Positions 467 through 32,682 of a stretch of 64,000 nt of DNA are shown in pieces. Below the pieces are notes generated by a model. The model saw nothing but the letters and a program-made list of their open reading frames with translations. It made no database searches and was not told the DNA's origin. The translations under genes and the position numbers were made by a program. The DNA is from Selaginella moellendorffii (lineage: Eukaryota > Plantae > Lycopodiophyta): assembly GCF_000143415.4 (NCBI RefSeq), contig NW_003314296.1, positions 1,401,858 to 1,465,857 of the forward strand, in the 5' to 3' direction. Positions within the stretch are counted from its first letter, which is position 1, and each line of letters begins with the position of its first letter.

Positions 467-3400
467 TTACGGCTGCTGTTGTTGTTGCTGCTGCTGCTGG
501 TTGATCCCCACACTCGCCGCCTTCTTGCTGCTCACAAGGTAGCCATTCCTCGAGTGATGCAAGCCTTCGAGCGTCTTGGCCTCGAGCTCCGCGATCGACT
601 TCTGGAGGAGCTGCTCCTTGCGCTGCTGCTCCAGCGTAGTCAATCCAATCTCGCCCTCCGAGCAAGCCTGCTTGTGATGCACCAGGACGCTGCTCGTCGT
701 CGCCGATCGCTCCACTCCCCTGCTCGAGGCCTTGTCTCTCTCGCAAATCCCACCACCAATCCTCAGAGCCTGCCGCTGCTCCAGCGATCCCTGTTGCTGC
801 TTCCCCGGCTCTACAGCTTCTCTACCACTAAACTCTCCCACCATCTCGGAGCTCGGCCTCTCCGAGCACGTCGCGTCCACGAATCTCTCCGAGCCGTCGA
901 ACAGCGTCTCGTATCTCAGCGCGCCCGGCTCGCAAAGCCCATTCTCCTTCCTGCCCGTCGCGTCTTGTTGGCTGAGGAAGCTACACTCGGGCCACGTCCC
1001 CGCCGGCTTGAGCGTCCGTTCCAGCTCCGGAGCTAGCGACGTTGCCTTGGCTATGTCCACCAAGTCGGCGAAGCAATCGTTGCTGCATGAAGCGGACGAT
1101 GGACTCGACGGCGGCCTGTGGTGGTCTTCCACTGCTCTCTCCTGGTCGAAGAAGCAAAATCCTTCGTCGGGCTTGCACACGGCGCTCAAAGAAGTTGATG
1201 GTGACGACGAAGTGCCGGCTGTGCTGATCCTGTAGGCTGTGGACGTCTCCCCAGCGTCGCAGTCGAATGGAAGAGCTTCTTGAGCTGCAGTGTCCACCGC
1301 CTGCGAAGCCACCAGTTGCTGCAAGTCGAAGTCCGTGTCCAGCAGCCGGCTCAACGAGTCCATGTTTTGGTTGTGCGGGCTGGACTGAGGAGAGCTCAGG
1401 CTGCTACTGCGCTTGCACCGGCACCTATTCCTTATCTCCAAAAGAGCCGACTCGTGCTTCCTTTGCAGCTCCCTCAGCTCCTGCTCTTGTCGCAGCGCTA
1501 GCAGCTTTAACTCCCGGGCAATGGACTCATCTTGCTCGGCCGAACTTGTTGTAACCGCGGCTACTGTTGTTGTTGTTGCTGCTGCTACTGCTGCTACTGC
1601 TATGTCGGAGCTACCTTCTGGACCGCTAACTGCATCCTCCGAGGTCTCCACCACCATCTGCTGCTCTGGACACCCGCTGCTCTTGATGGTAACCAGCACC
1701 TCGTTGCAGCCAGCCCCGTCCGAGTCCACGTTTTGATGCTCCACAATCTTGAGAAGATTCGTTGGCGTCTGCTCGGTTTTCACGTCCAAGCAAAAGGTTC
1801 CCTGACAGGTTGCCACCGGAGAGCTGACTTCTCCTGTGAGATCCCAGTCATCGCCATCCTCGCGAATTTCCGAGGAACCACTTGAGAAGATGTGAGGTGC
1901 ATCATACTGGTCGGATCCTTCCGGGTGATATGTGACCTCTTCAAATCTGCCGTGCATGGAGGACGAAGTGCCCTCCAGTCGAGGAGAATACGACAAGGGC
2001 CCTGTTCTCGGAGACCGTGATTTCACACTTGCTTGACCAGCCTCAACAGTCGGACTTTCGGTTCGTGTTTCGTCGTCCGAGGTCGCGTCTACTGCAGAAG
2101 GTGACTCAACTTCCTCCGGTACAGACACTTGAGCTACCGACGGACTTTCTTCTCTCGCTTGTGCTTGATCATCCACCTCTGTCACACCATTGTCCTCAAA
2201 AGAAGCCCCGGGTCGCCAGTCGGGAACCAAAGCCACGATTGCCGCATCAATCATTTCAGCGATGGTTGTGACATCCTGGTCTGAGAGGTCGAGTTCGGCA
2301 ACCATTTCACTGGCGACACTCATAGCTGTGTCCCCTTCAATGGAAAACGGAAAGTGGATGTTTCGAACGTGACCTGTAAAGCGAAAAGTTAAGCTACAGT
2401 GCACATAAAAAGCTGAGACCCACCTTCCAAGTCTGCAATGCGAACTCTCAAAAATATCGTGTCGTCGTCTTTCTTCTTCCCTTTCACCCTGAAGTCTCTG
2501 CTTCGTTTTCCTTCTTCCCTGAAAGAAACTCCCTTCTGATAGCTTCCAAGGCCGCCTTGATCTGAATCCGTCTGGCTTTGCTCAGGGCTAGAAGCTCCAA
2601 AAGGAGCGTCGTCACCCTCTTTATTTTCATCGCTCGTTCGGGCGGCGTCACCCATGATTCCGTCCCTGGTCGGAGAAGCTTCGGTTCTCCTGCTGGTCGA
2701 ATCAACGGACCCAGGTCTGCACGACGGCTCCTCTTTGATCGTTGAGAGACCTTCCATATCGTCTGCTCTTGATGTTGAGCGGGATATCGGTGGTACCAAC
2801 TCAAGCGGTTCGCGGTCTTCACTCTGAAGAAACGGGTCCATGAGTAGCTCTCTTGCTGGGAGCCTTTTGGAGACAGTCGCCAGGCATTTCTCAATAAAAG
2901 CTCGGACTTCCAGATCCTTCACTCTGTCAAGTGCAGCTGGCTTCTTCCCCTGATGAAACAGCGGTCAAGTCAAATGTTAATTTAGTGCTAACACGAGAAC
3001 TTACGGAGGTCACTTTCTTATATATCTGTGCTGCATTCGTACATTCGCTGTAGGGATACTCGAAAGTGACCATCTCCAACAAGCACATTCCAAACGAGTA
3101 AATGTCCACTAGCTCATTATATTCTTCTTCATACAGCTCAGGAGCCATAAACTCAGGTGTTCCTGTAACAAAAAACGCTGCTATTTAAAAGACCGTAACA
3201 CCGGAGCTTACCAATGACACTGTGTGCTGCATGCGCCTGTCGCAAGATAGCTGCAAGCCCAAGGTCTCCAATCTTCACTTCCCCCTGGTTCCCATTCACA
3301 AAGATATTGTCGCACTTTAAATCCCTGTGAATAATAGGAGGATTATGACTGTGAAGATAGAGCAAGCCGCGTAGTATTTGCTTTGCCCAATTCTTGACCG

Positions 3401-4034: not shown

Positions 4035-4602
4035 CTCGTCTTGCTAGCAACTAACCCTAGGACACAAACCCTAGCACCCGGAAGAACCTGGAAGAAACGA
4101 GCCCGGATCAGCCAGATCGAATGCCGATGCGCGATCGGCAGCGCGATAATCCGCCGATCCAAGCACAAGGCCAGGGACCGGGCTACTCTCGTTCATCTCG
4201 CGAAATGGCGCGCATCCCGCCGGCGAAATCTTTGATCTTGATCTTCCCGCGGCGATGGAGAGGAGAAAGAGGGAAGAGGAGGAGGCGATCGCGAATTACG
4301 CGGCGGTGGATCTAGAGGTATCCAAGAGAATGCCGGGTCCGCCAAGCGCCGCTCCATGCTGCTGCTCCTCCTCGCCCAGACCTAAGCTGCGGCGTGAGTG
4401 CCATGAATCACGTCCACGTTTTTTGCCCCGGGAAGGGAATCGAACCCGTGACCCGGCTATGAAAAAGAGACAAAAGGCTAGCGGATAATAAGTAACTTTA
4501 TCTCTTTACCGGCTTTATCCCGGCAAGTTGACACTTTCTTCGCGATTTGCATGTTCTTCATGCTGGCTCGAGTATATCTATATCGAAAATGGAGAGATTT
4601 CT

Positions 4603-6819
4603 TTAGTTCCCGGGAGTGTTTAAAGTTACCTCTTTTCTCCACATTTTCTGGAAGATCTCGTCGTCAACAATCGCAGTGGCGGACTCGTAGCTCAGGCAGC
4701 GTTTCGAGAAAGCACTCAAGGCACGCTTATCTTTGGCGCTGGATTTCTACATAAGACAAAGAGAAATGTGTGTGTGAGAGAGAGAATTGAGTGGTTAACC
4801 ACTTACGAAAGACTTCTTTTTGCGTATGATCTCCGCAACGTAGTGTATCCACACGCTGTTATTCTTTGGGAAACTACAATCAAAACGCAATCACTTCGCT
4901 GTCGATCAGAATCGTTAAACACTTGCCTGCCTTCCCATTGTCCGCCTGTTATATCTTTCATTCTTCTATACGTGTCAGCCTGCAAAATAAAAAGAATCAA
5001 GAAATGAATAACAGTGAACTTCCTGTTGGCTACCTGGACGTCTCCCTTTGGTCCTTCAAACCACGACGGATCTGACAAGTCACAGAATACGACTTGCTTT
5101 CCTGGGACAAAAATCAAGAAATGAAAGCCATTGTCATTGTCAAGAAAGAAAGCCGCATGACTGAAGGAACGTACCTGTGTCAATGCGGGATAAAGTAAAA
5201 TCTATCAATGCCACTGATAAACCGTGCGTATTCACTAGAAAATGCCTGTTTTCTAATCTGAAGTCAAGCTGCTCGTGTTGATCCCTGGACAAGACAATGT
5301 TGCCCCTGCACTACAAAAATTAGACACAACTTAAGAGAATAAACTCCTCGTACCAGTGCAAGTCCCGATGCTCGAAACCATATGCCTGCTCCGCAACTGC
5401 AAGCGAGAGAACAACCTGCGACAGAGTTATTGCTTGTTTGCTTGAGAAGCGAAGCTCACATACCTGTAGCAATAGGCTTTTAACTTCCTCATAGTTGAGG
5501 AGCTCAAAGCTTTCCAAGTCCGTGCCTCCGTCAGCAAGGACAAAGACAACATAAAGCTGACACAGATGTCAATAGATTTAATATCCAAGCCTTGCAGTGG
5601 CGACCAAACCTGTTCTTCCGGAAACGCCAATGGCTGATCGTTTTCAGAATTATGTTGTGTGTCCCACTTCTTCCACGCACGCACCAAGTTCTTATCNNNN
5701 NNNNNNNNNNNNNNNNNNNNNNNNNNNNNNNNNNNNNNNNNNNNNNNNNNNNNNNNNNNNNNNNNNNNNNNNNNNNNNNNNNNNNNNNNNNNNNNNCGCC
5801 ATTGACTTTAAAACTCCCGTCCATGGGAACGACTTTGAAAACATTCCCATTGCCTTTGTAAGCCTCTCCAAACGTCCCTTCTCCTATCTTCACTATTGTT
5901 TTCAGATCACTTAGCACAGATAAAACGAGTTAGTCCGGAAAAAAAATAACCGAAAATACCCACCAAAACTCTGAAAATCCTTGTGAAAGGCTGACAATAC
6001 TTTCCTGGTCCGACTCGTGTAGCAGGATGTCTATCATCGACATTGTGGGAAGCTCTGCAACTGGTTTCGAAATGCTTAAGCATTCCAGGTCCGATATAAG
6101 AGCGTCCATGGGCCTTGGTCTCAACACACCACGGACGGGAGGTGTTCTTAAGGCAGCGCTCAAAAGATCCTCTGGACTCGCAAAAATCTCCTCCGGAACA
6201 GCTTCCAAATGTCCATCCCTCGCAGGAAGAAAGCACGTACTGCCTTCGAAAATTGATCTCCGAGTAAAAGTTTTGGGAGAAGGACTCTCCTCCTGGAGCT
6301 CGAACGCATCCACTTCGGCAAAATGTGCTTGCTTCTCTCGAACAAAAGTGGCTGGAGGCTTCGAAGGAACCACCCTTCTCTGGGATCCATGAAAAAACTC
6401 AGGAACTCTCAAAAACCTGGAAAAACCCAAAGACTTACTTTCATCTGGGCCGAAAAACGTTGCAGCGGACAAGGTATCTTATGGTGCGCAAAATCCTTTT
6501 GAAAGACCACGCTTGTTCGTCTTGAAGAATCCAATCCACGAGTAAAGATAAAAGAAGAACACCGGAAAATCTCACCTGGAAGAAAGGCAGCGATCGATCC
6601 AGCTCTTGGTATGCGTTGTCTTCCTCTTCCCCTCATCGGCGGCGCCTCCATCCTTGGCCTTGCCGCGCCGCTTAAACACAGCAGCTGGCTTCTTCCTCTC
6701 CAATCTCGCGAAATCCCCATCTGGCCGATGGATCAAGATCCCAACAACACTAGCAGCGGTGAAAAGAACACACCTGGGAACAGCGCCTCCTCCGCCATGT
6801 CCAAGCTCAGCTCCTCCAT
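4603..6819 (-). CDS. Haspin-like Ser/Thr kinase, multi-exon, interrupted by assembly gap 5697-5796
   Basis: KIGEGTFGEAYK, LAVAEQAYGFEHRDLHW-GNIV, DFTLSR, FEGPKGDVQ-ADTYRRMK and FAEVDAFEL motifs; start and end inferred from splice sites. Confidence 0.88.
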
Positions 6820-7017
6820 CGCTAGGGCTCAAGCATTTTGAATTTTGGGCGGGAAAGGGTTTAGGGCATACACGTGGACAGAAAATGGCATAAAGAGTAT
6901 CGGGAATCTTTGCTGGATTAGTGTTCTTTGCGTGGGCTGTTTTCTAGGTGACAATGACAATAAAAAGGTCTTGGACGATGTTTCTCTGCTATTCTCCTCT
7001 AGAATTTGGGATCGTTC

Positions 7018-8150
7018 ATGGGTCTTCCAAATTTCAATTTGCTAGTGCTGATTATCAATGAGAATGTGTTGATCATATTTGCTAGTAAGTCTTCACCTGT
7101 GTTTTCCTTTTGATTAAATCTATGCGTTGCAGCTTTTAGTGCTGTGTGCTTGAAAGACTACATCAAAGCAGGAGTTTTAGTTTGTTTGTTCTTGCTTGGA
7201 AACTGGATCATAGCTTGGTCTGAGGCGAATAACAAAGATCACGTAAGAATTCCCAATCTCTTCATTTGATTTTACATACTCTTGTCCAACAGATCAACAT
7301 CTCCAATGATCTAGAATCCGCATCATTTGTGAAAACCACAAGCTCGTCTCGTAAGATAGAATCTCATAACAACAAATCTGGGGAGACAGTCACAACAATG
7401 GTCACCGAAGAAGCAAAGCTCTTCAAGCGATCACCGATTATAGACTTCTTTGCAAAATATCATACCCCAGGTTAGAAAACATTCTAAGAACATCACGAAA
7501 TCATTGATATTAAGAAAATCACTATTGTGCGTGCCTGTGCAGCCATGATCTTAGCTACAGCACTGGTCCCTCTCGTGCTGGACACGAGCAATAAAAAACA
7601 ATGGCTTTACTCGTCGCTCGTCGTAAGCCCATGCGCTCTTGTGATCTCTAGCACAGTCACAACCACTGTTGCAAAAGCCCGAGCTGCGCAATTGGGTCTT
7701 GTGATCCAGGGCGGTGCTGGCTGCCTCACGGCTCTCGCAAGGCTCAAGATCCAGAAGGAGAAACTCCGGGAGGTATCGAACAAGAAGGGCGAGATCACTG
7801 TGACATGCGAGGATGGCGATGGCAGCAGCGAGCATGCGCGGCCAAGTCTCGAGCCCGACGAAGTTGCCATGCTCACATCGGCAGCTTGGATTGGGAGAGA
7901 GTATGTTGCGGCAGTCTCTTCTTGCAATCTCTTCTTGCTCGTCACAAAGATGCTCGTCACGGGGTTTGTGGTTGCTGGCTACATTCCAGCGCTTGGGGCA
8001 GTGGCCCTCATTGCAGATCTTGGAGCTTGCACGGCGGTGGCTTTGAGAGGATTTGTCACACTCTTGTTGGTCGAGGAGAAGGGAGCTTCTCGACGAGATC
8101 TGGAAGAGCGGAAACAAGGTGAATGGGACTTGAGGACTCCGTTGCTTTAG
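7018..8150 (+). CDS. Mini-HMA copy 1: membrane-core-only derivative of a P1B-2 (HMA2/4-like) heavy-metal ATPase, 320 aa (exons 7018-7084, 7133-7242, 7293-7470, 7543-8150)
   Basis: Phase-consistent GT-AG introns give an open frame. Segments INENVLIIFA / LKDYIKAGVLVCLF / IDFFAKYHTP / VVSPCALVISS..AAQLGLVIQG / VTKML..IADLGAC align to HMA M1-M6. No TGES, DKTGT or GDGxND motif. Confidence 0.78.
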
Positions 8151-8604
8151 AATTCTCCAAATTGAAAGCAGAGTTAAGAATAGTGTATATGTATACATAA
8201 ATTCATAAATAAAAATGACAATACTTTACCAAATGAGCATGGTAGTTTGTAACTTTTGGAATACTCTTAAATAAATTGCTATACTTTGCATGTAGCAGTA
8301 GTGTTATTCTTATTTATTAATTTAATTGATTAAATAAAGTTTATAATTATAAGCATGTTTGTAATTTATAAACATAAGATTAATCTTATTGCCATTACAT
8401 GATAAAATAAATAGAATATACTGGAAAGGTTTAAGAAATTTTATAAATTATAAACAAGTCATCACAGGTTTGCTTAAGCAAACCAAAAATTAAGCTAATT
8501 ACTTGTAGAGTTTATGGCATATCGTGTTCTGTTTCCTAAGTGACGATGTTTCTCTAGAACTTTGGCTGTGTATTCTCCTCTAGAATTTGGGAAATCGTTC
8601 ATTC

Positions 8605-9657
8605 ATGGCTCTTGCACAAGTTGATTTGCTGTTGCTGATTATCAATGAGAATGTGTTGATCATATTTGCTTGTAAGTCTTCACCTGTGGTTTCCTTTTGA
8701 TTAAATCTATGCATTGCAGCTTTTAGTGCTGTGTGCTTGAAAGACTACACCAAAGCAGGAGTTTTAGTTTCTTTGTTCTTGCTTGGAAACTGGATCATAG
8801 CTTGGTTTGAGGCGAAAAAAAAAGATCACGTAAGAATTCCCAACATCTGCATTTGATTTTGCATACTCTTGTCCAACAGATCAACATCTTCAATGATCTA
8901 GAATCCGCATCATTTGTGAAAATCACAAGCTCGTCTCATACCAAGATAGAATCTCATAATAACAAATCTTGGGAGACAGTCACAACAATGGTCACCGAGG
9001 AAGCAAAGCTCTTGAAGCGATCGCCGACTATAGACTTCTTTGCAAAATATCATACCCCAGGTAAATTGCTCTACTAAATCATTGATATTAAAAAAAAAAA
9101 TTCACTATTGTTTGTTCGTGCCTGTGCAGCCATGATCTTAGCTACAGCACTGGTCCCTCTGGTGCAGCAATCGAAAACACTGGCTTTACTCGTCGCTCGT
9201 CGCAAGCCCATGCGCTGTTGTGATCTCTAGCACAGTCACAACCACCCGAGCTGCGCAATTGGGTCTTGTGATCCAGGGCGGTGCTGGCTACCTCACGGCT
9301 CTCGCAAGGCTCAAGATCCAGAAGGAGAAACTCCGGGAGGTATCGAGCAACAAGGGCGAGATCACTGTGACATGCGAGGATGGCGATGGCAGCAGCGACC
9401 ATGGGCGGCCAAGTCTCGAGCCCGACGAAGTTGCCCTCTTCTTGCTCGTCACAAAGATGCTCGTCACGGGGTTTGTGGTCGCTGGCTACATTCCAGCGCT
9501 TGGGGCAGTGGCCCTCATTGCAGATCTTGGAGCTTGCACGGCGGTGGCTTTGAGAGGATTTGTCACACTCTTCTTGGTTGAGGAGAAGGGAACTTCTCGA
9601 CGAGATCTGGAAAAGCAGGAACAAGGTGAATGGGATTTGAGGACTCCGTTGCTTTAG
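8605..9657 (+). pseudogene. Mini-HMA copy 2, frameshifted near-identical duplicate of copy 1
   Basis: Same exon layout (8605-8671, 8720-8829, 8880-9060, 9130-9657). An 8-nt deletion near 9164 shifts the frame to TAG at 9228-9230, and there are further in-frame deletions relative to copy 1. Confidence 0.75.
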
Positions 9658-9772
9658 AATTCTCCAAGTGTTTGCCTTCAAATTGAAAGCAACCAAAAGT
9701 GTGGTGATGCTACAGTTAAGAATAGAGCGTATATGCTGAATACATGTGTTTACAAAATGACAATACTTAGTT

Positions 9773-9808
9773 TGTATGTATGTATGTATGTATGTATGTA
9801 TGTATGTA

Positions 9809-9853
<45 letters not shown>
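9773..9853. repeat. Compound microsatellite (TGTA)n(AT)n
   Basis: Directly visible. Confidence 0.95.
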
Positions 9854-9857
<4 letters not shown>

Positions 9858-10734
9858 TCTTATAAACTGAAAATATTTATATTTAGTTTCAGATTTTTCT
9901 AGTCATTAATATAAGACAGCCAAAAGATCATGAATTGCAATCTCAGAAGTTCTTACCACAATTAATATACATATTCTCATATCATACAATTATATTTATA
10001 CATTTAATTTTTATTTCACTTAGCAATAATGTATGGTTTACTTTGAATTTTACCAATTTATAATATAAAATTTAAATAACAAAAGGCAATATATTCACAT
10101 AGGTTTCAACTTGACTTGGAGACTGAGGTCTCTTAACTATAAAATAGAAGCTTTTATATTTTACAGAATATATGAAGTTATTCTTAAATAACTAGATAAT
10201 AAATAAATAATAATAAAAAAAAAATTTTAAGCGTCAAATTCTGTTCCTTCCACTAGTTTTAAATATTGTTAAATATACTTTTCTTTTTAGATATATAAAT
10301 TGTTATAATAGAGAAGTGTCCAAAACAATATAAATTTCGTTAAATGTAATTGACATGCACAATATTAAGTAGAGGAATTTATATACTTGTGAAGTCTTGA
10401 GAGCCCTAAAACACCTATTACAATATTCACAATTGTCCATGAGCATGACATCAAATAGTATATTAACAAGTGATTCAACATCTAAAACTATTCTAGAAAA
10501 TTTTTTCTTCATTTTGTACAATATTTCTTTCTGCCAAAGGTTTGTAGAACTATTATAAAAAACATGTGATTTTTTTGTACTTTCATATTCAAATTCAATG
10601 AATGCAAAATGTTGTTATGATGGAATGACATTGCTAATGGAATATAGACTTTCAATTACTCTAAGGTCACCAAACTACATGTAGCTGAAAACTACCAACT
10701 TACCCCATTCCCCCTTATTCTTTGAGAAATGACC

Positions 10735-11856
10735 ATGGGTCTCCCAAAAATCAATATGCAATTGTTGATTCTGGATGCCAATATCTTGATCCTTTTTGCT
10801 AGTAAGCAATAGCTCTCATAGGCTAAATCTCTAAACTGAAATTTTGTGCAGCTTTTAACTCTGTGTTCCTTGAAGACTACACCAAAGCAGGAGTTTTAGT
10901 TTCTGTGTTCCTGCTTGCAAATTGGTTCATTGCCTGGTTTGAGGAGAATAATGAAAGATATGTAAGTTGATCAAGTCTTTTCATCTATGTTCTACTAATC
11001 TGGTTCAATAGATTAACCTATTAGACGATCTAGAGTCTGCATCAGTTCAAACCGTTGTGAAAGTTGCAAGTTCTTCTCATACTAACATGAACTATTGCAA
11101 CAACAAAATTAATGTGTTTGTGGAGACATTCACTACAATAATCATGGAGGAAGAAAAACCCTTCAAGCACTCAATGCTTATGAACATCTTTGCAAAATAC
11201 TACAGTTCTGGTAAATTAGTTGAAATTTAAACATCAAAATTATTGCTAAATTACATGAATCTGATGCAGCCACAATCTTAGCTACAGCACTGATCCCCCT
11301 CCTGCTGAGCACAAATAGAAAACACTGGATTTACTCATCACTTGTCATAAGCCCATGCGCCCAAGTAATTTCCAGCACAATGGCAGCAACTTGTGCCAAG
11401 GATCTAGCTGCACGATTGGGTCTTGTGATCCAAGGTGGTACTGGCTGCCTCAAAGCTCTCGCAAAACTCGATATCCAACTTTGTGAGCTATCGAGCAATA
11501 AGAGTGAGATCATCGTGACCAGTGAGGATCACAATATTGGAAGCAATGCCAACTCTGTATGTCACTCGCTTGTTCCTGATGACGTTGTTAAGCTCAGCAC
11601 AGCAGCTTGGATTGGAAGAGAGTACACTACTGCAGTGGCACAAAACAATCTTTTCTTGCTCATCATGAAGATGCTCATAACAGTGTTTGTAGTGGCTGGC
11701 TACATTCCAGCATTTGGAGCAATGGTCCTTATTGTAGACCTTGGGGCTTGCATGGTGGTGATTTTGAAAGGAATCAGCGCCCTCTTGTCAATCCAAGAGA
11801 GCTTTCCAGTGGGGAGGACTCCAAAGGCAAGTGAAATAGTACTATTAAGTTCTTAA
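10735..11856 (+). CDS. Mini-HMA copy 3, diverged intact paralogue, 320 aa (exons 10735-10801, 10852-10961, 11012-11210, 11270-11856)
   Basis: Open spliced frame MGLPKINMQLLILDANILILFA/TFNSVFLEDYTKAGVLVSVF../..FAKYYSS/..VISPCAQVISS..AARLGLVIQG..IMKML..IVDLGAC, with the same intron positions and phases as copy 1. Confidence 0.75.
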
Positions 11857-12299
11857 TATTAATCTTGAAGTAATAATAATTGAGCTTTTCTATTTTTTGC
11901 CCTATCCCTTCACTCTTAGGAGTTTGGCATCATCCTTTTGTTCAGTGGCCCAAAGCTTTAAATTTCATATTCCATTGCCATTGGCACACATATTCAAGGG
12001 TTAGGTTTTGCCCCATGGTAGGAAAATCAAATTTTTAATTGATCATTGTAACAATTTTTATCAAAGTTCACACTTATTACTCCATACTTTTGAATGTAAC
12101 AATATTTTTCAATTAATTAAAGCTCTTTTTGATATATCCTTGAATTTGAGTAATATTGAGATGGGTGACCTCTCAAAAAGTTTTGAACTAAAGAGGTTAC
12201 AAGGATTTGAACTAAAGAGGTTACAAGGATGGATAGAGGTCTTGACTCTGGAGTGGGAACAAATGATAATAATTTTAAAGCAAGAATAATGATATAAAT

Positions 12300-13865: not shown

Positions 13866-16800
13866 TGTATAAACCATAAATCTTTTCTTTCCAATTTGCT
13901 AACTTACCTCATTTATCCAATCACCACTACTTTGGCGTTAGTTAAGTTCTATTGCCAAGGTTCCCATATATTGTACTAGCTGCTACTTGGTTCTACTTAA
14001 TTTCAACTACTCACTACATGAGCAATAAAGTATTAGCCATTCATCCATGGATTCTTAAATTCTCTCTCAATGCCCTTCCTTGGGTTAAATTAAACTTAAG
14101 GTTTGGCTACACCCCTACAAACATAAGTAGTTAAACACACTAAGCCTTTAGATTCATAACATTCCTTGGTACAACAAAACTTAATCATAGGGGGTGCATC
14201 ACTTGCTTCAAGACTGCAAGGGGAAACACTATAACCTAACGGCCTGATATAAATATCTTTACTCCCCCACTTCCATCCCAAAGGGAAGGCCCAAGCTTCT
14301 AGGAAGGAACAAGGATCAATGAGCCACAAGGTACTCACTATAATAAGTTTCATTTATGAGAGTGGGAGTTAATCTTAAACACTTCCTTGAGTAGCTTCTT
14401 TGGCACCACTCGAGTCCATACTCACTCCCATCTAAGGCCCCTTAACCCCACATCTCAACCTTAAATTTGGTTTGAAAGCACCATTGAAGAGTTCCTTCAA
14501 AACTAATTCTTGGACCTTACTTTCCACACTATAGTTTTGGAACCTTTTACACCCCTTTCCCCCCCCCCCTTGCAGAGACAATCACTTTGGGCTTTCACCC
14601 TATGATTTGTATTAGTATTTGGATTTAGTCTTGGACTCGATCTCAGACTCAATCTTAAGCTCAACCTCAGATTTAGTCTCCGACTTGATTTTGGACTCGA
14701 CCTCGGATTAGGTCTCGAACTCATTCTTAGACCCAATCTCAAATCCTAGAATCGATCTCGAACTCAATCTCTAACTAGGTCTCGAACTCGATCTTAGACT
14801 CAATTTTGAACTCAGTCTTAGACTTCGTCTTGAACTTAGTTTTAGAGTCTATCTCGAACTCGATCTTGGACCCAGTCTTATCCAATAAATATTTTGTCAT
14901 TTCAGTCATGGTTTCAGGGATCCTTTAGCCTACAACACTTTAGGGAGTTGGTTCCTTACAACTCCACCACCCATTGAAGAAATTTGATGCCCATATTAAA
15001 CATCACTTTTAATTTTATGACTTGTTGACCATGTCTTTAGAGAACTTCCCCTCACTTAGTAGTGTGCTTAAGTCAGCCTCCATGGCTAAGAGCCCATGAC
15101 AATGGGATATAGATGTCTCTATACCCCTTACCTCACCGTGTTCTAGTATAGGGTTGGGACTTGAACCCAACCTCCATAAAAGATGTCTATGGATTCGATA
15201 TCCTCTAGGGGAGTCAAGCGTAGCTCCTTACATTTGGTTGACTTAGCTAAACCAATGTTAATTAGCTTACCTTTGGCACGCTTTTAAGTCCTAACACATA
15301 ACATTACTCAATTTCACAAATGGATACTTTAATAAGTACATAGAGTTTTACTTTGCAAAAATTCTTCCACTAGATCTTGCATATTTGCCAAGTTTTCTTC
15401 CAATTCCTATGTTTCTAATGGAAATCCTTTCCACTTTACATGGAACTCCTTCACCTCAGTTGTGCTTACGCACATTAAGGATGGTCTCAACCTTGTATTC
15501 TTCCTCCCTTTGGATAATTTCAGGTAAAGGTCTTACTTGGTTTTTGCAAAACAAGTTCTCAAAATATAGCTTGAGTAAGTTCACATGGAACATAGGGTGC
15601 ATCTTCCCCATCAAACCTAGGGAAGTTAGAGGTAGTAAGCCACCTTACTAATTCGAACCTCAAACTCATAAAACCCCGTGAACCTCAAGATTAATTCATT
15701 TTCAGAAATTCATGCATTTTATCTTTGGGTCAACTTCTGGTTGATCCCACTTGGTAACCTTAGGTTCTTGGTATTCAGCCACACCTTCTCCCTAGGTTGG
15801 AACTCTATGTTTTAGCACTTTTGATTTGCATATTTGGTTTGCCTTTGTTAAGCATGTTTTAAGGAATCCCACACTAGATCTGCTAGGTTGTTATCATGTT
15901 GGATATTGCCAACTTCAAGCTTACTTTTGACTTAGAGCATCTGTCATGATATTGCTCTTTCTAAAATCTTGCGATCGAACTTAACCAAAACATTAGCCCA
16001 CATACCCTATTTTCCTTACAAGTTAAGCTGTTATAAAAAGTGTTTCATTGCCACATTATCTGTGTAAACTTTGAAGTGCTTCTTAAGGTAGTGTCGCCAC
16101 TCCTTGAGCGTTTTGACCATTGCAAATAATTCCTTTTTGTGGGTAGGCCACTTTCATTGAGCTTTGTCCAACTTCTTCATGAAAAATGCTATTGGGTAGT
16201 TGTTTTGCTTCAAAACTGCACCAAATACAAAGTCTAAAATGTCCATTTCTACCTTGAAATTTTTACTAAAGTCTAGTAACACCAATAAAGGAGTTTTCCT
16301 CAAATTCACTTTAAGGTGAACAAATGCCACCTCACATTCTATTATTTATACTATCTTCTCTTTTCCCATTTGGTATATTAAAGGCAAAGTTACTTTTGAA
16401 TAATGTTTGATAAACTTTTGATAGTAGTTGCATAGCCCTAAAAATGCTTTTAACTCATATACATTCGATGATCATTCCCATTCTTGGATCGCTTGAACCT
16501 TCTTAGGGTCCACCTTGAGCTCGTCCTTGCCCATCACATGTTTGAGAAACTTTACCTTTTATTAAACAAAGTTACATTTGCTCTCTTTAGTATACAACTT
16601 ATGTTCCCTTAATTTCTCAAACACATTCGTCAAGTGTTTGGCATACTCCTTTAGTGTCTTGTTATATATTAGGATGTCATCAATGTAGACAACCATAATA
16701 TTGGGGGGTTGGGGGGGGGGGGGGGGGGGGGGGGGAAAAAACCCCACTGGGAACCCCCCCCAAAAAGGATCCCCAAAATAGGAATTTGGATAACCCCCCT

Positions 16801-19591
16801 TAAAACCCCAAAGGGGCCTCCCTTTTTCCCCCCTTTTTTTCCCCCCCCCCTGGGAGGAAGGATAAAAAAGCCATCTTAATTTTTTTAGGGGGGTAACCCC
16901 CCCGGGAAATTAAAATTAAACAGGGGGCTTTGGCCCTAAATTGGCCCACCCTTAAAATTTAAGCTTTCCCCCTTGAACATTTCCTTCCGGGATTTTCCAA
17001 AACCCCTAGGTTTTTAATTGAGGAAAGGGTTCCCCCAACTGGTTGAACCCATCTTTCCCAAAAAACCTGTTAAAACCCCTTTTGTCTAAAAAAGGGGGAA
17101 CCAAATTTTCTTTCCCAAACCCTACTTTGACTTTTGNNNNNNNNNNNNNNNNNNNNNNNNNNNNNNNNNNNNNNNNNNNNNNNNNNNNNNNNNNNNNNNN
17201 NNNNNNNNNNNNNNNNNNNNNNNNNNNNNNNNNNNNNNNNNNNNNNNNNNNNNNNNNNNNNNNNNNNNNNNNNNNNNNNNNNNNNNNNNNNNNNNNNNNN
17301 NNNNNNNNNNNNNNNNNNNNNNNNNNNNNNNNNNNNNNNNNNNNNNNNNNNNNNNNNNNNNNNNNNNNNNNNNNNNNNNNNNNNNNNNNNNNNNNNNNNN
17401 NNNNNNNNNNNNNNNNNNNNNNNNNNNNNNNNNNNNNNNNNNNNNNNNNNNNNNNNNNNNNNNNNNNNNNNNNNNNNNNNNNNNNNNNNNNNNNNNNNNN
17501 NNNNNNNNNNNNNNNNNNNNNNNNNNNNNNNNNNNNNNNNNNNNNNNNNNNNNNNNNNNNNNNNNNNNNNNNNNNNNNNNNNNNNNNNNNNNNNNNNNNN
17601 NNNNNNNNNNNNNNNNNNNNNNNNNNNNNNNNNNNNNNNNNNNNNNNNNNNNNNNNNNNNNNNNNNNNNNNNNNNNNNNNNNNNNNNNNNNNNNNNNNNN
17701 NNNNNNNNNNNNNNNNNNNNNNNNNNNNNNNNNNNNNNNNNNNNNNNNNNNNNNNNNNNNNNNNNNNNNNNNNNNNNNNNNNNNNNNNNNNNNNNNNNNN
17801 NNNNNNNNNNNNNNNNNNNNNNNNNNNNNNNNNNNNNNNNNNNNNNNNNNNNNNNNNNNNNNNNNNNNNNNNNNNNNNNNNNNNNNNNNNNNNNNNNNNN
17901 NNNNNNNNNNNNNNNNNNNNNNNNNNNNNNNNNNNNNNNNNNNNNNNNNNNNNNNNNNNNNNNNNNNNNNNNNNNNNNNNNNNNNNNNNNNNNNNNNNNN
18001 NNNNNNNNNNNNNNNNNNNNNNNNNNNNNNNNNNNNNNNNNNNNNNNNNNCAACTCTATAGTCCTTGGTTTACCCAACCATTGCACTATTAGTCTAGCTT
18101 GCTTAACTATGTCTACAGCCACAAAATTACCCGAAGCACCTGTATCAATAAGGATTTTAATATACTACCTTTGAGCTTCCCTCAGAGGCTAGTAGATATC
18201 AGAAACGACTCTCTACCAAAGTTGCTCATGTAATCAATAATTTTGAGCTAGAGACTTGATCAAGTATCTCAGTTTGAACTTCATCTGACTTAATAGCCAT
18301 ATTGATTTTGACTTTTTTTGGGTAGGGATATTCTCTCAAAAAGTGTCTCGCTTCACCGCAGTTGTAACATATATTATTTCCCACGCTACTAGCAAATTTT
18401 GCCTTCTTATTAGTGGGTTTGTCCTTTTTTGCCTAACTCCCTCATGTACTTGCTCATTGGCCAGTAGATTTGCTTTTCCAAAACTCTAAGGGCTCATTCT
18501 TAGAGAAACTCTTCTTGAATTTCCCTTTGCCATATCTCTCCTTTAATTTGGCTCATTTGCTAAATATGGATCTTAACCACATTGTATTCCCCTTTTGCAT
18601 GTTATTATTGAAGTGCACCTTAATAGTTGCATCCAATGCTTCCATGTAATTGGTTAGGTTCCAATTCATCACCTCACCTCAAGCCTAAATCTGTAAGCCT
18701 GATATGAAGGCATGGAATGCATCTATGTCACCCATGTCCGTAACAAAGATCCTTTTAGACATAAACACATTCACATATTCTTGAATGGTTTCTGTCTGTG
18801 TCAGTCTACTTAACTCATCTGTTAGGTGCAGAGTAGCATTCAGAAGAATATAAATTGTGTGAATCCTCACCTTCATCACTTCCTAAGTGGCCACTAGTCC
18901 TTTGTTGGCTTCTATTGTTCTTCACCAAAACTTAAGGATATCTGCTAAGTATAGTTTTGTATATGGGACCTTTTCTAAGCTTAGTAACTGCAACACTCAA
19001 AAGTAATCTTCCATGTCATAAAACTAATCTTCCACCACCCTATAGTCATTCACTCCCTTGAAGACCGGTGGGGGCTTTGGTTTATACTTGGGAACTACTT
19101 GAGGGACTGATTCTACTTCGATTTATTTGACTTTGTTCGGTTCCGCCTCAGTCCCTGCCAAAGGATCCATGCCGTTTGCACTGCCAACATTTGTAGTCTT
19201 TTGCCTTTTCTTCCATTTCTCGTCATGCTTTAACTTGCATACAAGGGTCTTTAAAAGAGCATTGGTTTGTGCCAATTATCCTTCTAAAATGTTCAATCGA
19301 GCTTTGGATGACCGAACCTCCCCATTAAACTTCTTTTTGGAAGCTTTCTCACTAGAATCCTCTTCATGCAAGGATTCATCATCCATAGTTTTTTGTTCCA
19401 CCAAAGGCTTTAGCTTTGGAGAAGGTTCTATCTCTACCTTGGTTCTCTTACACCATGCCTTAGCCATTTCCCAGCAATCTATCTTTATCCTTTACTAGAA
19501 TTGAGGAAAATGCTTTAATACCAAATTGTAGACCACAAATTTTTCCTTTCCAATTTGTTAACTTACCTTATCTATCTAACCACCAATGCCT
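13866..19591 (-). mobile_element. Degenerate Ty3/gypsy chromovirus-type LTR retrotransposon (3' LTR 13866-14551, PPT 14552-14570, PBS 19512-19523, 5' LTR remnant 19527-19591)
   Basis: Matching LTR ends at 13866 and 19527; PBS TGGTATTAAAGC; gag zinc knuckle CYNCGEARH (~18350); protease LIDTGASGNF (~18140); RT YIDDILIY (~16680); RNase H (~16050-16300); HPMFHVNLLK and chromodomain-like EYKVETILNVR (~15450-15600). Confidence 0.85.
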
Positions 19592-30412: not shown

Positions 30413-30759
30413 TTAACTGCTAAATTCCTCAACCTAGTTTAATAAGTGCTTCAAGTTTCTTGTCAGCTGACACATGTGTAGAAACTAGAAACAGCTACAT
30501 TAATATAATAAACACAATGCATATATATATATATATATATAAAACATGTATTATATTTTGGCAAGCAATAGCACATAGTGCTAAATGTTACAATTTCTTT
30601 AGTTATTAGATTATTATTAAAAATTATTTGTAATAGTTTTCCTATTGCTTCTTTATTTAATAATGGCATAAAATCTAATATATTTAATTTTGAACCCAAT
30701 ATAGGGCAATGATCTCAATTGGATGGCATTGGATCTAATGAGAGGATGTGTTAGTTCGA

Positions 30760-32682
30760 ATGGTCCATGGGAGAACTCACATCTCCCCCCACTTCCTTGC
30801 CAGCATCTCCCAGCTCCTGAAAGACGATCTCGCCCAGCAGCTCAAGAAATGCACCGATCTCAACACTGGGAAGCTCCTCCACGCCCGGGTCCTCTCCTGC
30901 GGCCTCTCCCAGCATCGCATCCTCGCCCATCTCTTGATCCAAATGTATACCCGCCTCGAAACCAATCTCGACTCCGCCACGCGCGTCTTCGATCAGCTCC
31001 TGGTGAAGGACTGCGTCTCTTGCTCCGTGATCATGACCGCCCACATCCAGCACCGGCAATTGGATCAAGCCGCGGCGATCTTCCACGGTAGCCCCGAACG
31101 AGACGTTGTTTGCTGGAATGGAATGATCGCAGCGTTTGGGCAAAGCTCTCACGCCGCCACAGCGATCCAGTTCTTTCACAGGATGCCACAATGGAACACC
31201 GTTTCATGGAACTCTCTCGTTGCAGCATATGCCCGAACTGGGCATCTTGTGGAATCTAAATCCACGTTCGATTCCTGCCAACATAGAGACATCGTGACAT
31301 GGATCAACATGCTAACTTCATACAGTACACATGGAAAGTTGGCGGAAGCACGTGCCGTGTTCGATTACATGCCGGAGTGGACGGTGATAGCGTGGAACTC
31401 AATCTTTACAGCGTATGCCCATGAAGGGTATCTTGTTGCAGCTAAAGGGGTCTTTGATGAGATGCCAGAAAAGAGCCTTGCATCGATCAACGCGATGATA
31501 AATGCCTACGCTCAAAAGTCCCAGCTCCAGGAGGCGCGTGCCATGTTTGAGAAGCTTTCGGCGTGGGATATCCTCTCGTGGACGACACTGCTCCAGGCAT
31601 ATGCCGAGAACGGGAATATCCCCGAGGCAGAGGAGATATACTCGAGAATGCCGGAGCAGGACGTGGTCTCCTGGACTGCAATGGTGGCGGTGTACGCTCA
31701 ATCGGGGCAATTGGATCAAGCGAAATTACTCTTTGATCGAATGCCACGAAGAAACGAGGTGTCGTGGTGTGCAATTCTCGCTGGTTTTGGTGGAAATCTC
31801 CACACTGCCGAGGCGAAGGGGTTCTTTGATCGGATGCCACTCCACTCCCCAGTGGCTTGCAACACCATGGTGTATAGCTTTGCGCAAAACGGCTGCCTCA
31901 CTCAAGCAGTGGATCTGTTTGTGAATGTGAGTGATCACAATGTTGTGTCGTGGAATATGATCATCACAGCGTTTGCAAACAAGCGCGAGATCGATCGAGC
32001 TAAGCACCTGTTTGATCGCATGCCCGGATGGAACTCGGCATCGTGGAGCACCCTCACAGCTGCATATGCCCAAACTGGCGATCTTGTTTCTGCGAGAAAG
32101 ATCTTTGAGACAATGCCCGAGCATTGTGCTTTCTCGTGGAACACGATCATTGCCGGGTATGCCCAATCCGGGCAGCTTGTTAACGCAAAGTCTGCCTTCG
32201 ATGCCATGCCCGAGAAGGATCTGATAACCTGGAACGCGATGTTGGACGGCTACTCGGAGAATGGTTGTGGGCAACAAGCCATGGATCATTTCAACTCACT
32301 CCAGCTCGAGGGAGTGATCCCAAACGAGATCTCGTTCCTGGCGGTTTTGATCGCGTGTAGTCACATTGGCGAGCTCCATCAAGCTTGGGAGAAGTTTGCG
32401 TCGATGACTTCAGACTATGGCTTACAACCCGTGAGAGAACACTACTCCTGCATCGTTGACAGCCTTGGGCGGTCGGGACGGCTGCTCGAAGCAGAGGAAC
32501 TGATCAGGAATATGCCGTTTTCGCCGGACATAGCGATCTGGAACTGCTTGCTCAGTGCCTCGAAGCTATACCAAGATGTGGCTCGAGGAAGAGTGGCGGC
32601 CGAGAATCTTATAGACATTGATCCTGATGAACCTGTAGCGTATGTTATGCTTTCAAAACTTTATGACTCTTTGTTCTTATAA
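30760..32682 (+). CDS. PLS-class pentatricopeptide repeat protein with E domain (no DYW), intronless
   Basis: About 31-aa S-type repeats (FDRMP..VVSWNAMIAAYAQSG) and a C-terminal HYSCIVDSLGRSGRL..PDIAIWNCLLSA..AYVMLSKLY; first in-frame ATG at 30760. Confidence 0.92.
   Translation: MVHGRTHISPHFLASISQLLKDDLAQQLKKCTDLNTGKLLHARVLSCGLSQHRILAHLLIQMYTRLETNLDSATRVFDQLLVKDCVSCSVIMTAHIQHRQLDQAAAIFHGSPERDVVCWNGMIAAFGQSSHAATAIQFFHRMPQWNTVSWNSLVAAYARTGHLVESKSTFDSCQHRDIVTWINMLTSYSTHGKLAEARAVFDYMPEWTVIAWNSIFTAYAHEGYLVAAKGVFDEMPEKSLASINAMINAYAQKSQLQEARAMFEKLSAWDILSWTTLLQAYAENGNIPEAEEIYSRMPEQDVVSWTAMVAVYAQSGQLDQAKLLFDRMPRRNEVSWCAILAGFGGNLHTAEAKGFFDRMPLHSPVACNTMVYSFAQNGCLTQAVDLFVNVSDHNVVSWNMIITAFANKREIDRAKHLFDRMPGWNSASWSTLTAAYAQTGDLVSARKIFETMPEHCAFSWNTIIAGYAQSGQLVNAKSAFDAMPEKDLITWNAMLDGYSENGCGQQAMDHFNSLQLEGVIPNEISFLAVLIACSHIGELHQAWEKFASMTSDYGLQPVREHYSCIVDSLGRSGRLLEAEELIRNMPFSPDIAIWNCLLSASKLYQDVARGRVAAENLIDIDPDEPVAYVMLSKLYDSLFL

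What the first reader, a model, noticed from the sequence alone, without database searches (positions are those of the whole stretch)
7018..11856. Tandem family of ATPase-less 'mini-HMA' proteins: a heavy-metal pump stripped to its six-helix membrane core
Seen: three 4-exon genes. Copies 1 and 3 are clearly diverged yet both splice into uninterrupted 320-aa frames with identical intron positions and phases and only in-frame indels. Known: the exon blocks match in order M1 (DINIL-like), M2 (DY.xA..VFLF), ..YYTP-M3, M4 (xPC..L.LS), the AAxxGLLI stalk, M5 and M6 of P1B-2 Zn/Cd ATPases such as HMA2/HMA4/ZntA. The N-terminal metal-binding domain, the actuator domain (TGES), the phosphorylation motif DKTGT and the N/P domains (HP, GDGxND) are each absent or replaced by short hydrophilic linkers of roughly 40-60 aa. 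Inference: the deletions predate the duplication and the frames survived long divergence, which suggests selection for a new, ATP-independent role such as a passive metal channel or carrier, a metal sensor, or a regulatory partner of full-length HMAs. I do not know of a described family like this.
Basis: partly seen in the sequence, partly recalled or inferred. Interest (0 to 1): 0.88.

Follow-up and report, generated by a model that had tools for sequence, protein, structure and literature searches.

The report
Engine-less heavy-metal pump genes in Selaginella
The spikemoss Selaginella moellendorffii carries a small, transcribed gene family that descends from a zinc/cadmium pump and keeps only its six-helix membrane core, so it cannot pump; what it does instead is untested.

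Summary
Window 7018-11856 (Selaginella moellendorffii) holds three tandem 4-exon genes. Copies 1 and 3 give intact 320-aa frames; copy 2 is frameshifted here but in frame on the other haplotype.

The proteins are homologous to P1B-2 Zn/Cd ATPases. Their closest relative is the species' own HMA3-like pump, and the three introns sit at that gene's intron positions and phases.

Lost from the parent:
- the N-terminal metal domain and helices MA/MB
- the A-domain exon (TGES)
- about 1 kb running from DKTGT through GDGxNDxP
- the Cys-rich tail

AlphaFold plus VIA-align recovers the P-type M1-M6 bundle (ZntA Z 12.1). In the metal site the M5 Lys, M6 Asp and the Pro-Cys of CPC are kept. CPC has become SPC, and the entry Glu has become Lys.

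Spliced RNA contigs confirm introns 2 and 3 of copies 1 and 3. For copy 1 versus copy 3, dN/dS is 0.52 (p = 8e-5 against 1), and all indels are in frame.

So this is a real, expressed, weakly constrained domain-loss family, seen only in this species so far. Function is untested. No paper found mentions it. This scan had not noted it before.

The parts
7018..7084 (+). Copy 1, exon 1: start codon and the first half of M1 (the counterpart of the DxNxL motif).
   Evidence: Frame and GT donor. The intron position and phase 1 match parent intron 4. No RNA coverage of this exon.
7133..7242 (+). Copy 1, exon 2: rest of M1 and M2. DYIKAG lies at 7156-7173, with Lys where pumps have the invariant entry Glu (ZntA E202).
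   Evidence: The exon 2-3 junction is present in an RNA contig of run X1.
7293..7470 (+). Copy 1, exon 3: a hydrophilic linker that replaces the A domain, followed by the pre-M3 helix ending in FAKYHTP.
   Evidence: Corresponds to parent exon 7 plus a 40-nt 5' extension; parent exon 6 (TGES) is absent. Both junctions are seen in X1 contigs.
7543..8150 (+). Copy 1, exon 4: M3; M4 with SPC (7626-7637); the stalk GLVIQGG; a roughly 45-aa linker replacing the P and N domains; M5 with Lys (7947-7949); M6 with Asp in DLGAC (8016-8030); stop codon.
   Evidence: X1 contigs cover 7540-8214 without a joint and run past the stop into the 3' UTR.
8605..9657 (+). Copy 2: a frameshifted pseudogene allele of a copy-1-type gene. 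It has 8-, 12- and 60-nt deletions and the same four exons.
   Evidence: The counterpart on GL377642 (P0003, 300 aa) is in frame but shares the 60-nt deletion. Most RNA reads over this region carry the GL377642 variants.
10735..10801 (+). Copy 3, exon 1. The GenBank model starts two codons earlier, at 10729.
   Evidence: No RNA coverage.
10852..10961 (+). Copy 3, exon 2: M1-M2, with DYTKAG at 10875-10892.
   Evidence: The junction 10961|11012 is in a 717-nt RNA contig of run X3.
11012..11210 (+). Copy 3, exon 3: linker 1 and the pre-M3 helix.
   Evidence: Both junctions are in the X3 contig.
11270..11856 (+). Copy 3, exon 4: M3; M4 with SPC (11350-11361); linker 2; M5 Lys (11668-11670); M6 DLGAC (11737-11751); stop codon.
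   Evidence: The X3 contig covers 11269-11744 without a joint.

Best explanation
These are real, transcribed, protein-coding genes of a young lineage-specific family. The family was born when a copy of the S. moellendorffii P1B-2 pump gene (HMA3-like, XP_002970998) suffered DNA deletions.

The deletions removed:
- the 5' exons (metal-binding domain, MA, MB)
- the A-domain exon
- about 1 kb fusing exon 8 to exon 12 (DKTGT through GDGxNDxP)
- the Cys-rich tail

The truncated gene then duplicated in tandem and between scaffolds.

The product is a roughly 320-aa, six-helix membrane protein with the P-type M1-M6 fold. It has no phosphorylation site, no nucleotide-binding domain and no actuator, so it cannot hydrolyse ATP or pump. 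That much follows from the sequence and from established P-type ATPase mechanism.

It keeps a remodelled intramembrane site: Ser-Pro-Cys in M4, Lys in M5 and Asp in M6.

My inferred working model is an ATP-independent protein that binds a divalent metal at this weakened site and lets it pass or senses it (facilitator or leak), probably in an endomembrane. Selection on the family is relaxed, and copies are gained and lost.
For: - Homology and descent. The profile search finds only full-length P1B ATPases beyond the family itself. The best is the species' own HMA3-like pump (E 3e-31, three stretches). A tree on 198 core columns puts the family sister to that pump (99/96). Mini introns 1-3 coincide in position and phase (1, 0, 1) with parent introns 4, 5 and 7.
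- Domain loss. See the alignment and the conserved-column table. Pfam is below threshold. No A, P or N exons exist anywhere in the 64-kb window.
- Fold. AlphaFold2 gives pTM 0.70 and six long helices. The 22 best VIA-align hits are all P-type ATPases, with ZntA 4umw at Z 12.1 and 233 residues aligned.
- Expression. Spliced contigs of copy 1 (X1) and copy 3 (X3) come from different studies. Both alleles of copy 1 are present, and stranded raw reads indicate plus-strand RNA.
- Selection. Omega is 0.52, with p = 8e-5 against 1. Identity by codon position runs 2 > 1 > 3 in most segments, and all internal indels are in frame. In a neutral simulation only 0.16% of frames stayed stop-free at 0.32 substitutions per site.
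- Shared derived residues. Glu to Lys, Cys to Ser, Thr-Pro to Ser-Thr and Trp to Gly are identical in copy 1 and copy 3. Pro, Cys, Lys, Asp and Gly of the site are kept.
Against: - Constraint is weak. Omega is about 0.5 overall and 0.55 in the helices. It is 0.56-0.77 and not significant among recent copies and alleles.
- The stem branch is about 8 times longer than the parent's (2.25 against 0.31).
- Indels inside M3 (-3), M4 (-4, just before the Pro) and M6 (+2), with loss of the first Cys and the entry Glu, may have destroyed metal binding.
- Copy 2 is a null allele here.
- Expression is low: 36 reads in 9.2 million records of X14.
- Exon 1 and the start codon are not covered by RNA.
- There are no protein-level data and no orthologue in another species.
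- Intron 2 is 76% identical between copies 1 and 3, so neutral divergence may be lower than dS suggests.
Confidence: 0.55

Rival explanations
1. Transcribed relics. The truncated gene lost its function when the domains were deleted. The copies are pseudogenes decaying slowly, and their intact frames and omega below 1 reflect a short time since constraint was lost, gene conversion, or chance.
For: Omega is high (0.5-0.8). The stem branch is very long. There are indels inside helices, and invariant pump residues are lost. Copy 2 is frameshifted, and P0001 and P0003 carry 12- and 20-aa deletions. Expression is low. Third-position identity in exons 1-2 is as high as at positions 1-2, which hints at gene conversion. 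The family is known from one species only.
Against: Two copies with dS 0.64 both keep 320-codon frames, and all six internal indels are multiples of three. The LRT rejects omega = 1 (p = 8e-5). In the neutral simulation only 0.16% of frames stayed stop-free per lineage. Splice sites are intact and used. Derived residues fixed before the duplication stayed identical afterwards.
Confidence: 0.27
2. Regulatory partner. The pump-core protein has no transport role of its own. It associates with full-length HMA pumps or their partners and modulates or poisons them, like plant microProteins or the truncated SERCA1 isoforms.
For: It retains the helices of its parent pump, which is still present in the genome. 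There is a precedent: SERCA1 truncated proteins cannot pump, lower ER calcium and induce apoptosis (PMC2192035 title and abstract).
Against: There is no evidence here for any interaction. P1B pumps work as monomers in the solved structures (my own knowledge, not tested here). Core identity to the parent is only about 40%, so interfaces may not be kept. Retention of a buried Lys and Asp is not required for a pure interaction role.
Confidence: 0.1
3. The transcripts act as RNA, for example as decoys or small-RNA sources related to the parent pump gene, and the open frames are incidental.
For: There are patches of high synonymous conservation in exons 1-2. Expression is low.
Against: Frame retention, in-frame indels and position 2 > 1 > 3 conservation point to selection on the protein. 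Nucleotide similarity to the parent is too low for tblastn to find more than the M3-M4 and M5-M6 blocks.
Confidence: 0.04

Closest known systems
P1B-2 Zn/Cd/Pb P-type ATPases (plant HMA2/3/4; bacterial ZntA, PDB 4umv/4umw); specifically the S. moellendorffii HMA3-like pump XP_002970998.2
   Same: Common descent: sister in the tree at 99/96, with shared intron positions and phases. The M1-M6 fold is the same. The Pro-Cys of M4, the M5 Lys, the M6 Asp-x-Gly and the FAKYxTP pre-M3 motif are kept.
   Different: No metal-binding domain, MA/MB, A domain (TGES), DKTGT, N domain (HP), TGDN, GDGxNDxP or Cys-rich tail. CPC is SPC, the entry Glu is Lys, and Thr-Pro after M4 is Ser-Thr. There are indels inside M3, M4 and M6. 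The protein is 320 aa against about 1000. It cannot be an ATPase.
Truncated SERCA1 proteins (S1T), Chami et al. 2001, PMC2192035
   Same: P-type pump derivatives that cannot pump yet are expressed. They lower ER calcium, a precedent for a pump remnant acting without ATP.
   Different: S1T are splice variants of the pump gene itself. They are C-terminally truncated, so they keep M1-M4 with part of the cytoplasmic domains and lose M5-M10. Here separate genes keep all six core helices and lose the cytoplasmic domains.
Pump pseudogenes and fragments listed in surveys of plant P-type ATPases (Pedersen et al. 2012, PMC3355532)
   Same: That survey footnotes P-type ATPase genes missing DKTGT or other core motifs as possible fragments, pseudogenes or chimeras.
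   Different: The cases it lists are single disrupted genes. The survey counts SmHMA1, 2 and 4 as the P1B-2 pumps of S. moellendorffii and, in the passages I searched, does not mention this family. Here several diverged copies keep frames and splice sites.
Domain-deleted bacterial P1B proteins from metagenomes (P0082, 395 aa; P0073, 270 aa)
   Same: P0082 also lacks the A-domain core and nearly all of P/N while keeping the helices. It recurs on three contigs and lies just downstream of a FUR-family regulator gene.
   Different: These are of independent origin. P0082 keeps MA/MB, CPC and DKTG. They are uncharacterised, so they give no functional information.

Membership tests
P1B-2 P-type ATPase (functional pump) | Phosphorylation motif DKTGT in the P domain | tested here: not met
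   The aligned columns read E/gap-K-L-R/C-E. The Asp is absent in all copies.
P1B-2 P-type ATPase (functional pump) | Actuator domain with TGES | tested here: not met
   The columns are deleted. The parent's exon 6 has no counterpart, and RNA joins exon 2 directly to exon 3.
P1B-2 P-type ATPase (functional pump) | N domain (HP) and P-domain motifs TGDN and GDGxNDxP | tested here: not met
   All of these columns are deleted. Exon 4 is continuous in the RNA contigs. Pfam Hydrolase gives no hit.
P1B-2 P-type ATPase (functional pump) | CPC motif in M4 | tested here: not met
   SPC in all five family members. Pro and the second Cys are invariant.
P1B-2 P-type ATPase (functional pump) | M5 Lys and M6 Asp (ZntA K693 and D714) | tested here: met
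   K and D-x-G are kept in all copies.
P1B-2 P-type ATPase (functional pump) | Eight helices (MA, MB, M1-M6) and an N-terminal metal-binding domain | tested here: not met
   The protein starts at M1. The model has six membrane helices.
P1B-2 P-type ATPase (by descent) | Significant sequence similarity, a shared fold and shared gene structure | tested here: met
   E 3e-31 to the parent pump and 1.2e-7 to ZntA. Z 12.1 to 4umw. Three shared intron positions. Sister in the tree at 99/96.
Processed or decaying pseudogene | Disabling mutations, omega near 1, no proper splicing | tested here: not met
   Not met for copies 1 and 3: the frames are intact, omega is 0.52 (p = 8e-5), and spliced RNA is present. 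Met for copy 2 of this haplotype.
Pump splice isoform (S1T-like) | Produced from the full-length pump gene by alternative splicing | tested here: not met
   These are separate loci on another scaffold than the parent (GL377581). There are no pump exons in the 64-kb window.

The most novel reading that the evidence does not exclude
A P-type ATPase membrane core has been converted into a stand-alone, ATP-independent metal permeation or sensing protein. That would be a natural pump-to-channel or pump-to-carrier transition, maintained by selection in a lycophyte. It may be paralleled by FUR-linked domain-deleted P1B proteins in bacteria.
Probability: 0.15. Interest if true: 0.85.

Novelty: new variant of a known kind. 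Interest (0 to 1): 0.6.

Why it matters
P-type ATPases are regarded as strictly coupled machines (review PMC10654040). I know of no stand-alone membrane core with a function. A naturally occurring, expressed and selectively retained M1-M6 core would offer three things:
- a test of what the ion pathway does without its engine (leak, facilitated diffusion or binding);
- a minimal scaffold for structural and biophysical work on P1B metal sites;
- a documented example of gene birth by domain loss, with the steps still readable in exon structure.

If it proves to be a slowly decaying relic, it is still a useful annotation. These loci are labelled 'hypothetical protein', escape Pfam, and one GenBank model (SELMODRAFT_417745) wrongly fuses copies 1 and 2.

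Tried and rejected
- Pfam on exons and on whole proteins gave only a sub-threshold E1-E2_ATPase hit (17.4 bits against a cut-off of 28.1) for P0002, and nothing for P0004.
- Foldseek against the PDB gave no significant match, with ZntA on top at E 0.4. It handles the discontinuous match poorly. VIA-align wide resolved it.
- Transposon capture (Pack-MULE type) was considered. There are no terminal inverted repeats around the units, and the shared intron positions argue for plain DNA duplication.
- A longer gene joining distant A, N or P exons was rejected, using tblastn of the parent against the whole window and the continuous RNA contigs.
- Partitioning omega into helices and linkers did not show stronger constraint in the helices (0.55 against 0.25). 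The linker estimate is saturated (t = 3.1) and alignment-dependent, so I draw nothing from it.
- Orthologues elsewhere: two word-indexed searches and one exhaustive profile search found only S. moellendorffii members. The control search with the parent pump found no named protein of another Selaginella species, and nothing above 56% identity outside S. moellendorffii. The absence is therefore informative for Diphasiastrum, ferns, bryophytes and seed plants, but not for the genus.
- Literature searches by locus tags, and by HMA or DKTGT with 'truncated', found no description.
- The search of earlier findings returned nothing relevant.
Full report
**What is in the sequence.** The region 6900-12000 contains three head-to-tail units with the same four-exon structure.
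- Copy 1 has exons 7018-7084, 7133-7242, 7293-7470 and 7543-8150.
- Copy 3 has exons 10735-10801, 10852-10961, 11012-11210 and 11270-11856.
- Each of these two splices (GT..AG, phases 1, 0, 1) into a 963-nt frame of 320 codons.
- Copy 2 (8605-9657) is of the copy-1 type, with exons 84-95% identical. It carries 8-, 12- and 60-nt deletions, is out of frame, and has stops.

Copies 1 and 3 are 57% identical in protein. Their flanks are unalignable, and their introns are 36%, 76% and 62% identical against 67-83% for exons.

**Source organism and the wider family.** Copy 3 equals SELMODRAFT_417746 of Selaginella moellendorffii, so the window is from that genome. The protein databases hold only five members, all from this species and all labelled hypothetical:
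- P0004, which is copy 3.
- P0160, a 544-aa model that fuses copies 1 and 2.
- P0002 and P0003 on scaffold GL377642.
- P0001 on scaffold GL377620.

GL377642 is collinear with the window at 97-98% identity. [quoted passage not shown] P0002 is then the allele of copy 1. P0003 is an in-frame counterpart of copy 2 that shares its 60-nt deletion. GL377620 carries one copy-1/copy-2 recombinant copy.

**Homology.**
- An exhaustive profile search of 1.84 billion representatives found the family itself. After that it found only P1B-type ATPases, each matched in three stretches (M1-M2, M3-M4, M5-M6). The best hit was the species' own 'HMA3-like' pump at E 3e-31.
- ZntA (4umv) is the only PDB sequence hit, at E 1.2e-7.
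- Pfam does not reach threshold, which explains the 'hypothetical' labels.
- AlphaFold2, run with an 84-row alignment, gave pTM 0.70 and mean pLDDT 71.6. It shows six long helices and two disordered or low-confidence linkers.
- VIA-align against 48,161 chains returned P-type ATPases as its top 22 hits. ZntA 4umw scored Z 12.1 with rmsd 4.2 over 233 residues, spanning chain residues 165-730. Z values in this range can occur for helical bundles in general. What is informative is that the top 22 are exclusively P-type ATPases and that this agrees with the sequence evidence.

**How the gene arose.** The parent gene (L003, GL377581) has 12 exons.
- Mini introns 1, 2 and 3 lie at the positions and phases of parent introns 4 (phase 1, inside M1), 5 (phase 0, after M2) and 7 (phase 1, after FAKYYTP).
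- Parent exons 1-3 and most of exon 4 (metal-binding domain, MA, MB) are missing.
- Parent exon 6 (the A-domain core with TGES) is missing.
- Mini exon 4 fuses the 5' part of parent exon 8 (M3, M4, stalk, and a remnant of the strand before DKTGT) to the 3' part of exon 12 (the end of the P domain, M5, M6). That corresponds to about 1 kb of genomic deletion removing DKTGT, HP, TGDN and GDGxNDxP.
- The Cys-rich tail is missing.

Every one of these changes is shared by copies 1 and 3, so they predate the duplication. The same holds for a 3-aa deletion in M3, a 4-aa deletion just before the M4 Pro, and a 2-aa insertion in M6.

On 198 core columns the family is sister to this one pump (99/96). That excludes the two other S. 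moellendorffii P1B-2 pumps and the pumps of Diphasiastrum, ferns, bryophytes and seed plants. The family's stem branch is 2.25 substitutions per site, against 0.31 for the parent. There are no terminal inverted repeats, and there are no pump exons elsewhere in the 64 kb.

**State of the metal site.** I examined the columns conserved in at least 80% of 80 full-length pumps.
- Kept: the M4 Pro and second Cys, the M5 Lys, the M6 Asp-x-Gly, FA.Y before M3, and the stalk AA..G.
- Changed identically in both copy types:
  - the invariant M2 Glu (ZntA E202 by the numbering) is Lys;
  - the first Cys of CPC is Ser;
  - Thr-Pro after M4 is Ser-Thr;
  - the M6 Trp is Gly;
  - the stalk Lys is Gln.

From my own knowledge, SPC is the M4 motif of P1B-4 pumps such as HMA1, so it is not in itself a dead motif. 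That was not tested here.

**Expression.** One read-laying run was made over 6950-11900.
- Run X1 has contigs that join 7242 to 7293 (the tool reports 7241, with one substituted base at 7242) and 7470 to 7543. They cover exon 4 continuously to 8214, past the stop codon.
- Two X1 contigs differ by the ACC insertion that distinguishes P0002 from copy 1, so both alleles are expressed.
- Run X3, from another study, has a 717-nt contig joining 10961|11012 and 11210|11270 of copy 3.
- Spliced forms cannot come from this genomic DNA, so these runs contain RNA.
- Stranded raw reads (X14) lie with the first mate on the minus strand, as expected for plus-strand RNA, at low depth.
- Over copy 2, 11-13 of 14-16 reads carry the variants of the in-frame GL377642 counterpart.
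- Exon 1 has no coverage in any run, so intron 1 and the start codon are predictions.

**Selection.** I used a pairwise codon-model fit (GY94-type, F3x4, my own script).
- Copy 1 against copy 3: omega 0.52, dN 0.33, dS 0.64, and the LRT rejects omega = 1 at p = 8e-5.
- Comparisons of copy 3 with the other copy-1-type genes give omega 0.45-0.50 with p of 3e-5 or less.
- Among copy-1-type genes and alleles omega is 0.56-0.77 and not significant, with few differences to work from.
- Identity by codon position is 2 > 1 > 3 in most segments. The exception is M1-M2, where third positions are as conserved as the others; this may reflect gene conversion.
- The six internal indels are all multiples of three.
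- In a substitution-only neutral simulation, 0.16% of frames stayed stop-free at 0.32 substitutions per site.

Together these show that the reading frames were maintained by selection for much of the time since the duplication. The constraint is several-fold weaker than is usual for a pump (that comparison is my own general knowledge).

**Interpretation.**
- Shown: descent, architecture, loss of all catalytic motifs, transcription with the predicted internal splicing, and weak but significant purifying selection.
- Follows from established P-type mechanism: there can be no ATP hydrolysis or E1/E2 cycling without the Asp of DKTGT and the N and A domains.
- Inferred: a six-helix membrane protein with cytosolic linkers. 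The linkers are Lys/Arg-rich, consistent with the positive-inside rule.
- Speculative: what it does. I favour an ATP-independent metal-binding or permeation role at the remodelled Ser-Pro-Cys/Lys/Asp site.
- Next most likely is a non-functional transcribed relic, then a regulatory partner of full-length pumps, with the truncated SERCA1 proteins of PMC2192035 as precedent.

**Known or new.**
- The survey of plant P-type ATPases lists three P1B-2 pumps for this species. In the passages I searched it does not mention these genes.
- No paper in the library mentions the locus tags.
- Searches for truncated HMA or DKTGT-less proteins found nothing comparable.

I file it as a new variant of a known kind: a P1B-2-derived, engine-less pump core. 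It fails most membership tests for a functional pump but is a member by descent.

**Side observation.** Metagenomic bacteria encode P1B proteins with analogous deletions. P0082 keeps eight helices, CPC and DKTG, but lacks the A core and nearly all of P/N. It occurs on three contigs and lies just downstream of a FUR-family regulator gene. This hints that domain-deleted P1B cores may recur, but it was not pursued further.

Noticed in passing
L004:3355-4542 (P0082); L005:6001-6813 (P0073): Metagenomic bacterial P1B proteins show similar domain loss. P0082 (395 aa, three ENA contigs) keeps MA, MB, M1-M6, CPC and DKTG but lacks the A-domain core and nearly all of P/N. It lies 129 nt downstream of a FUR-family regulator gene on the same strand, next to a GTP cyclohydrolase I gene. 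P0073 (270 aa, from ENA and JGI) lacks the N domain and most of P.
   Followed up: partly
window 9130-9657 versus L001:17774-18321: Copy 2 is frameshifted in the window, but its counterpart on GL377642 (P0003) is in frame. In stranded RNA-seq run X14, 11-13 of 14-16 reads over 9402-9463 carry the GL377642 variants. This would fit lower abundance of the frameshifted transcript (nonsense-mediated decay?), but the numbers are small.
   Followed up: partly
window 7018-7242 and 10735-10961: In exons 1-2 (M1-M2), third-codon-position identity between copies 1 and 3 is 0.80, as high as positions 1 and 2. Elsewhere it is 0.47-0.68. Intron 2 is also 76% identical. This may reflect gene conversion or a constraint at the nucleotide level.
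   Followed up: no
window 7018-9657: The GenBank model SELMODRAFT_417745 (P0160, 544 aa) merges copy 1 and parts of copy 2 into one protein. RNA contigs end in the 3' UTR of copy 1 (to 8214, just after an AATAAA), so the merged model is probably wrong.
   Followed up: partly
L002:9539-11647 (scaffold GL377620): A third scaffold carries a single family member (P0001). Its 5' part is copy-1-like (89%), and its 3' flank matches the region downstream of copy 2 (94%), as expected from unequal crossing-over between copies 1 and 2. Its upstream region matches window 5797-6549 at 98% but is interrupted by about 7.5 kb.
   Followed up: no
window 9775-9855: A compound microsatellite, (TATG)n followed by (TA)n, lies between copies 2 and 3.
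   Followed up: no
window 467-2404(-), ~4500-6830(-), 30748-32682(+), 55599-57884(+): Neighbouring genes: a kinase with an OSR1 C-terminal domain, a Haspin-kinase gene (assigned by collinearity with L001), and two PPR-repeat genes. None is related to metal transport.
   Followed up: partly
window 16001-18200: A very AT-rich stretch (GC 0.23) has ORFs of about 350 codons open in several frames on both strands and no Pfam hit. It is probably low-complexity or repeat DNA.
   Followed up: no
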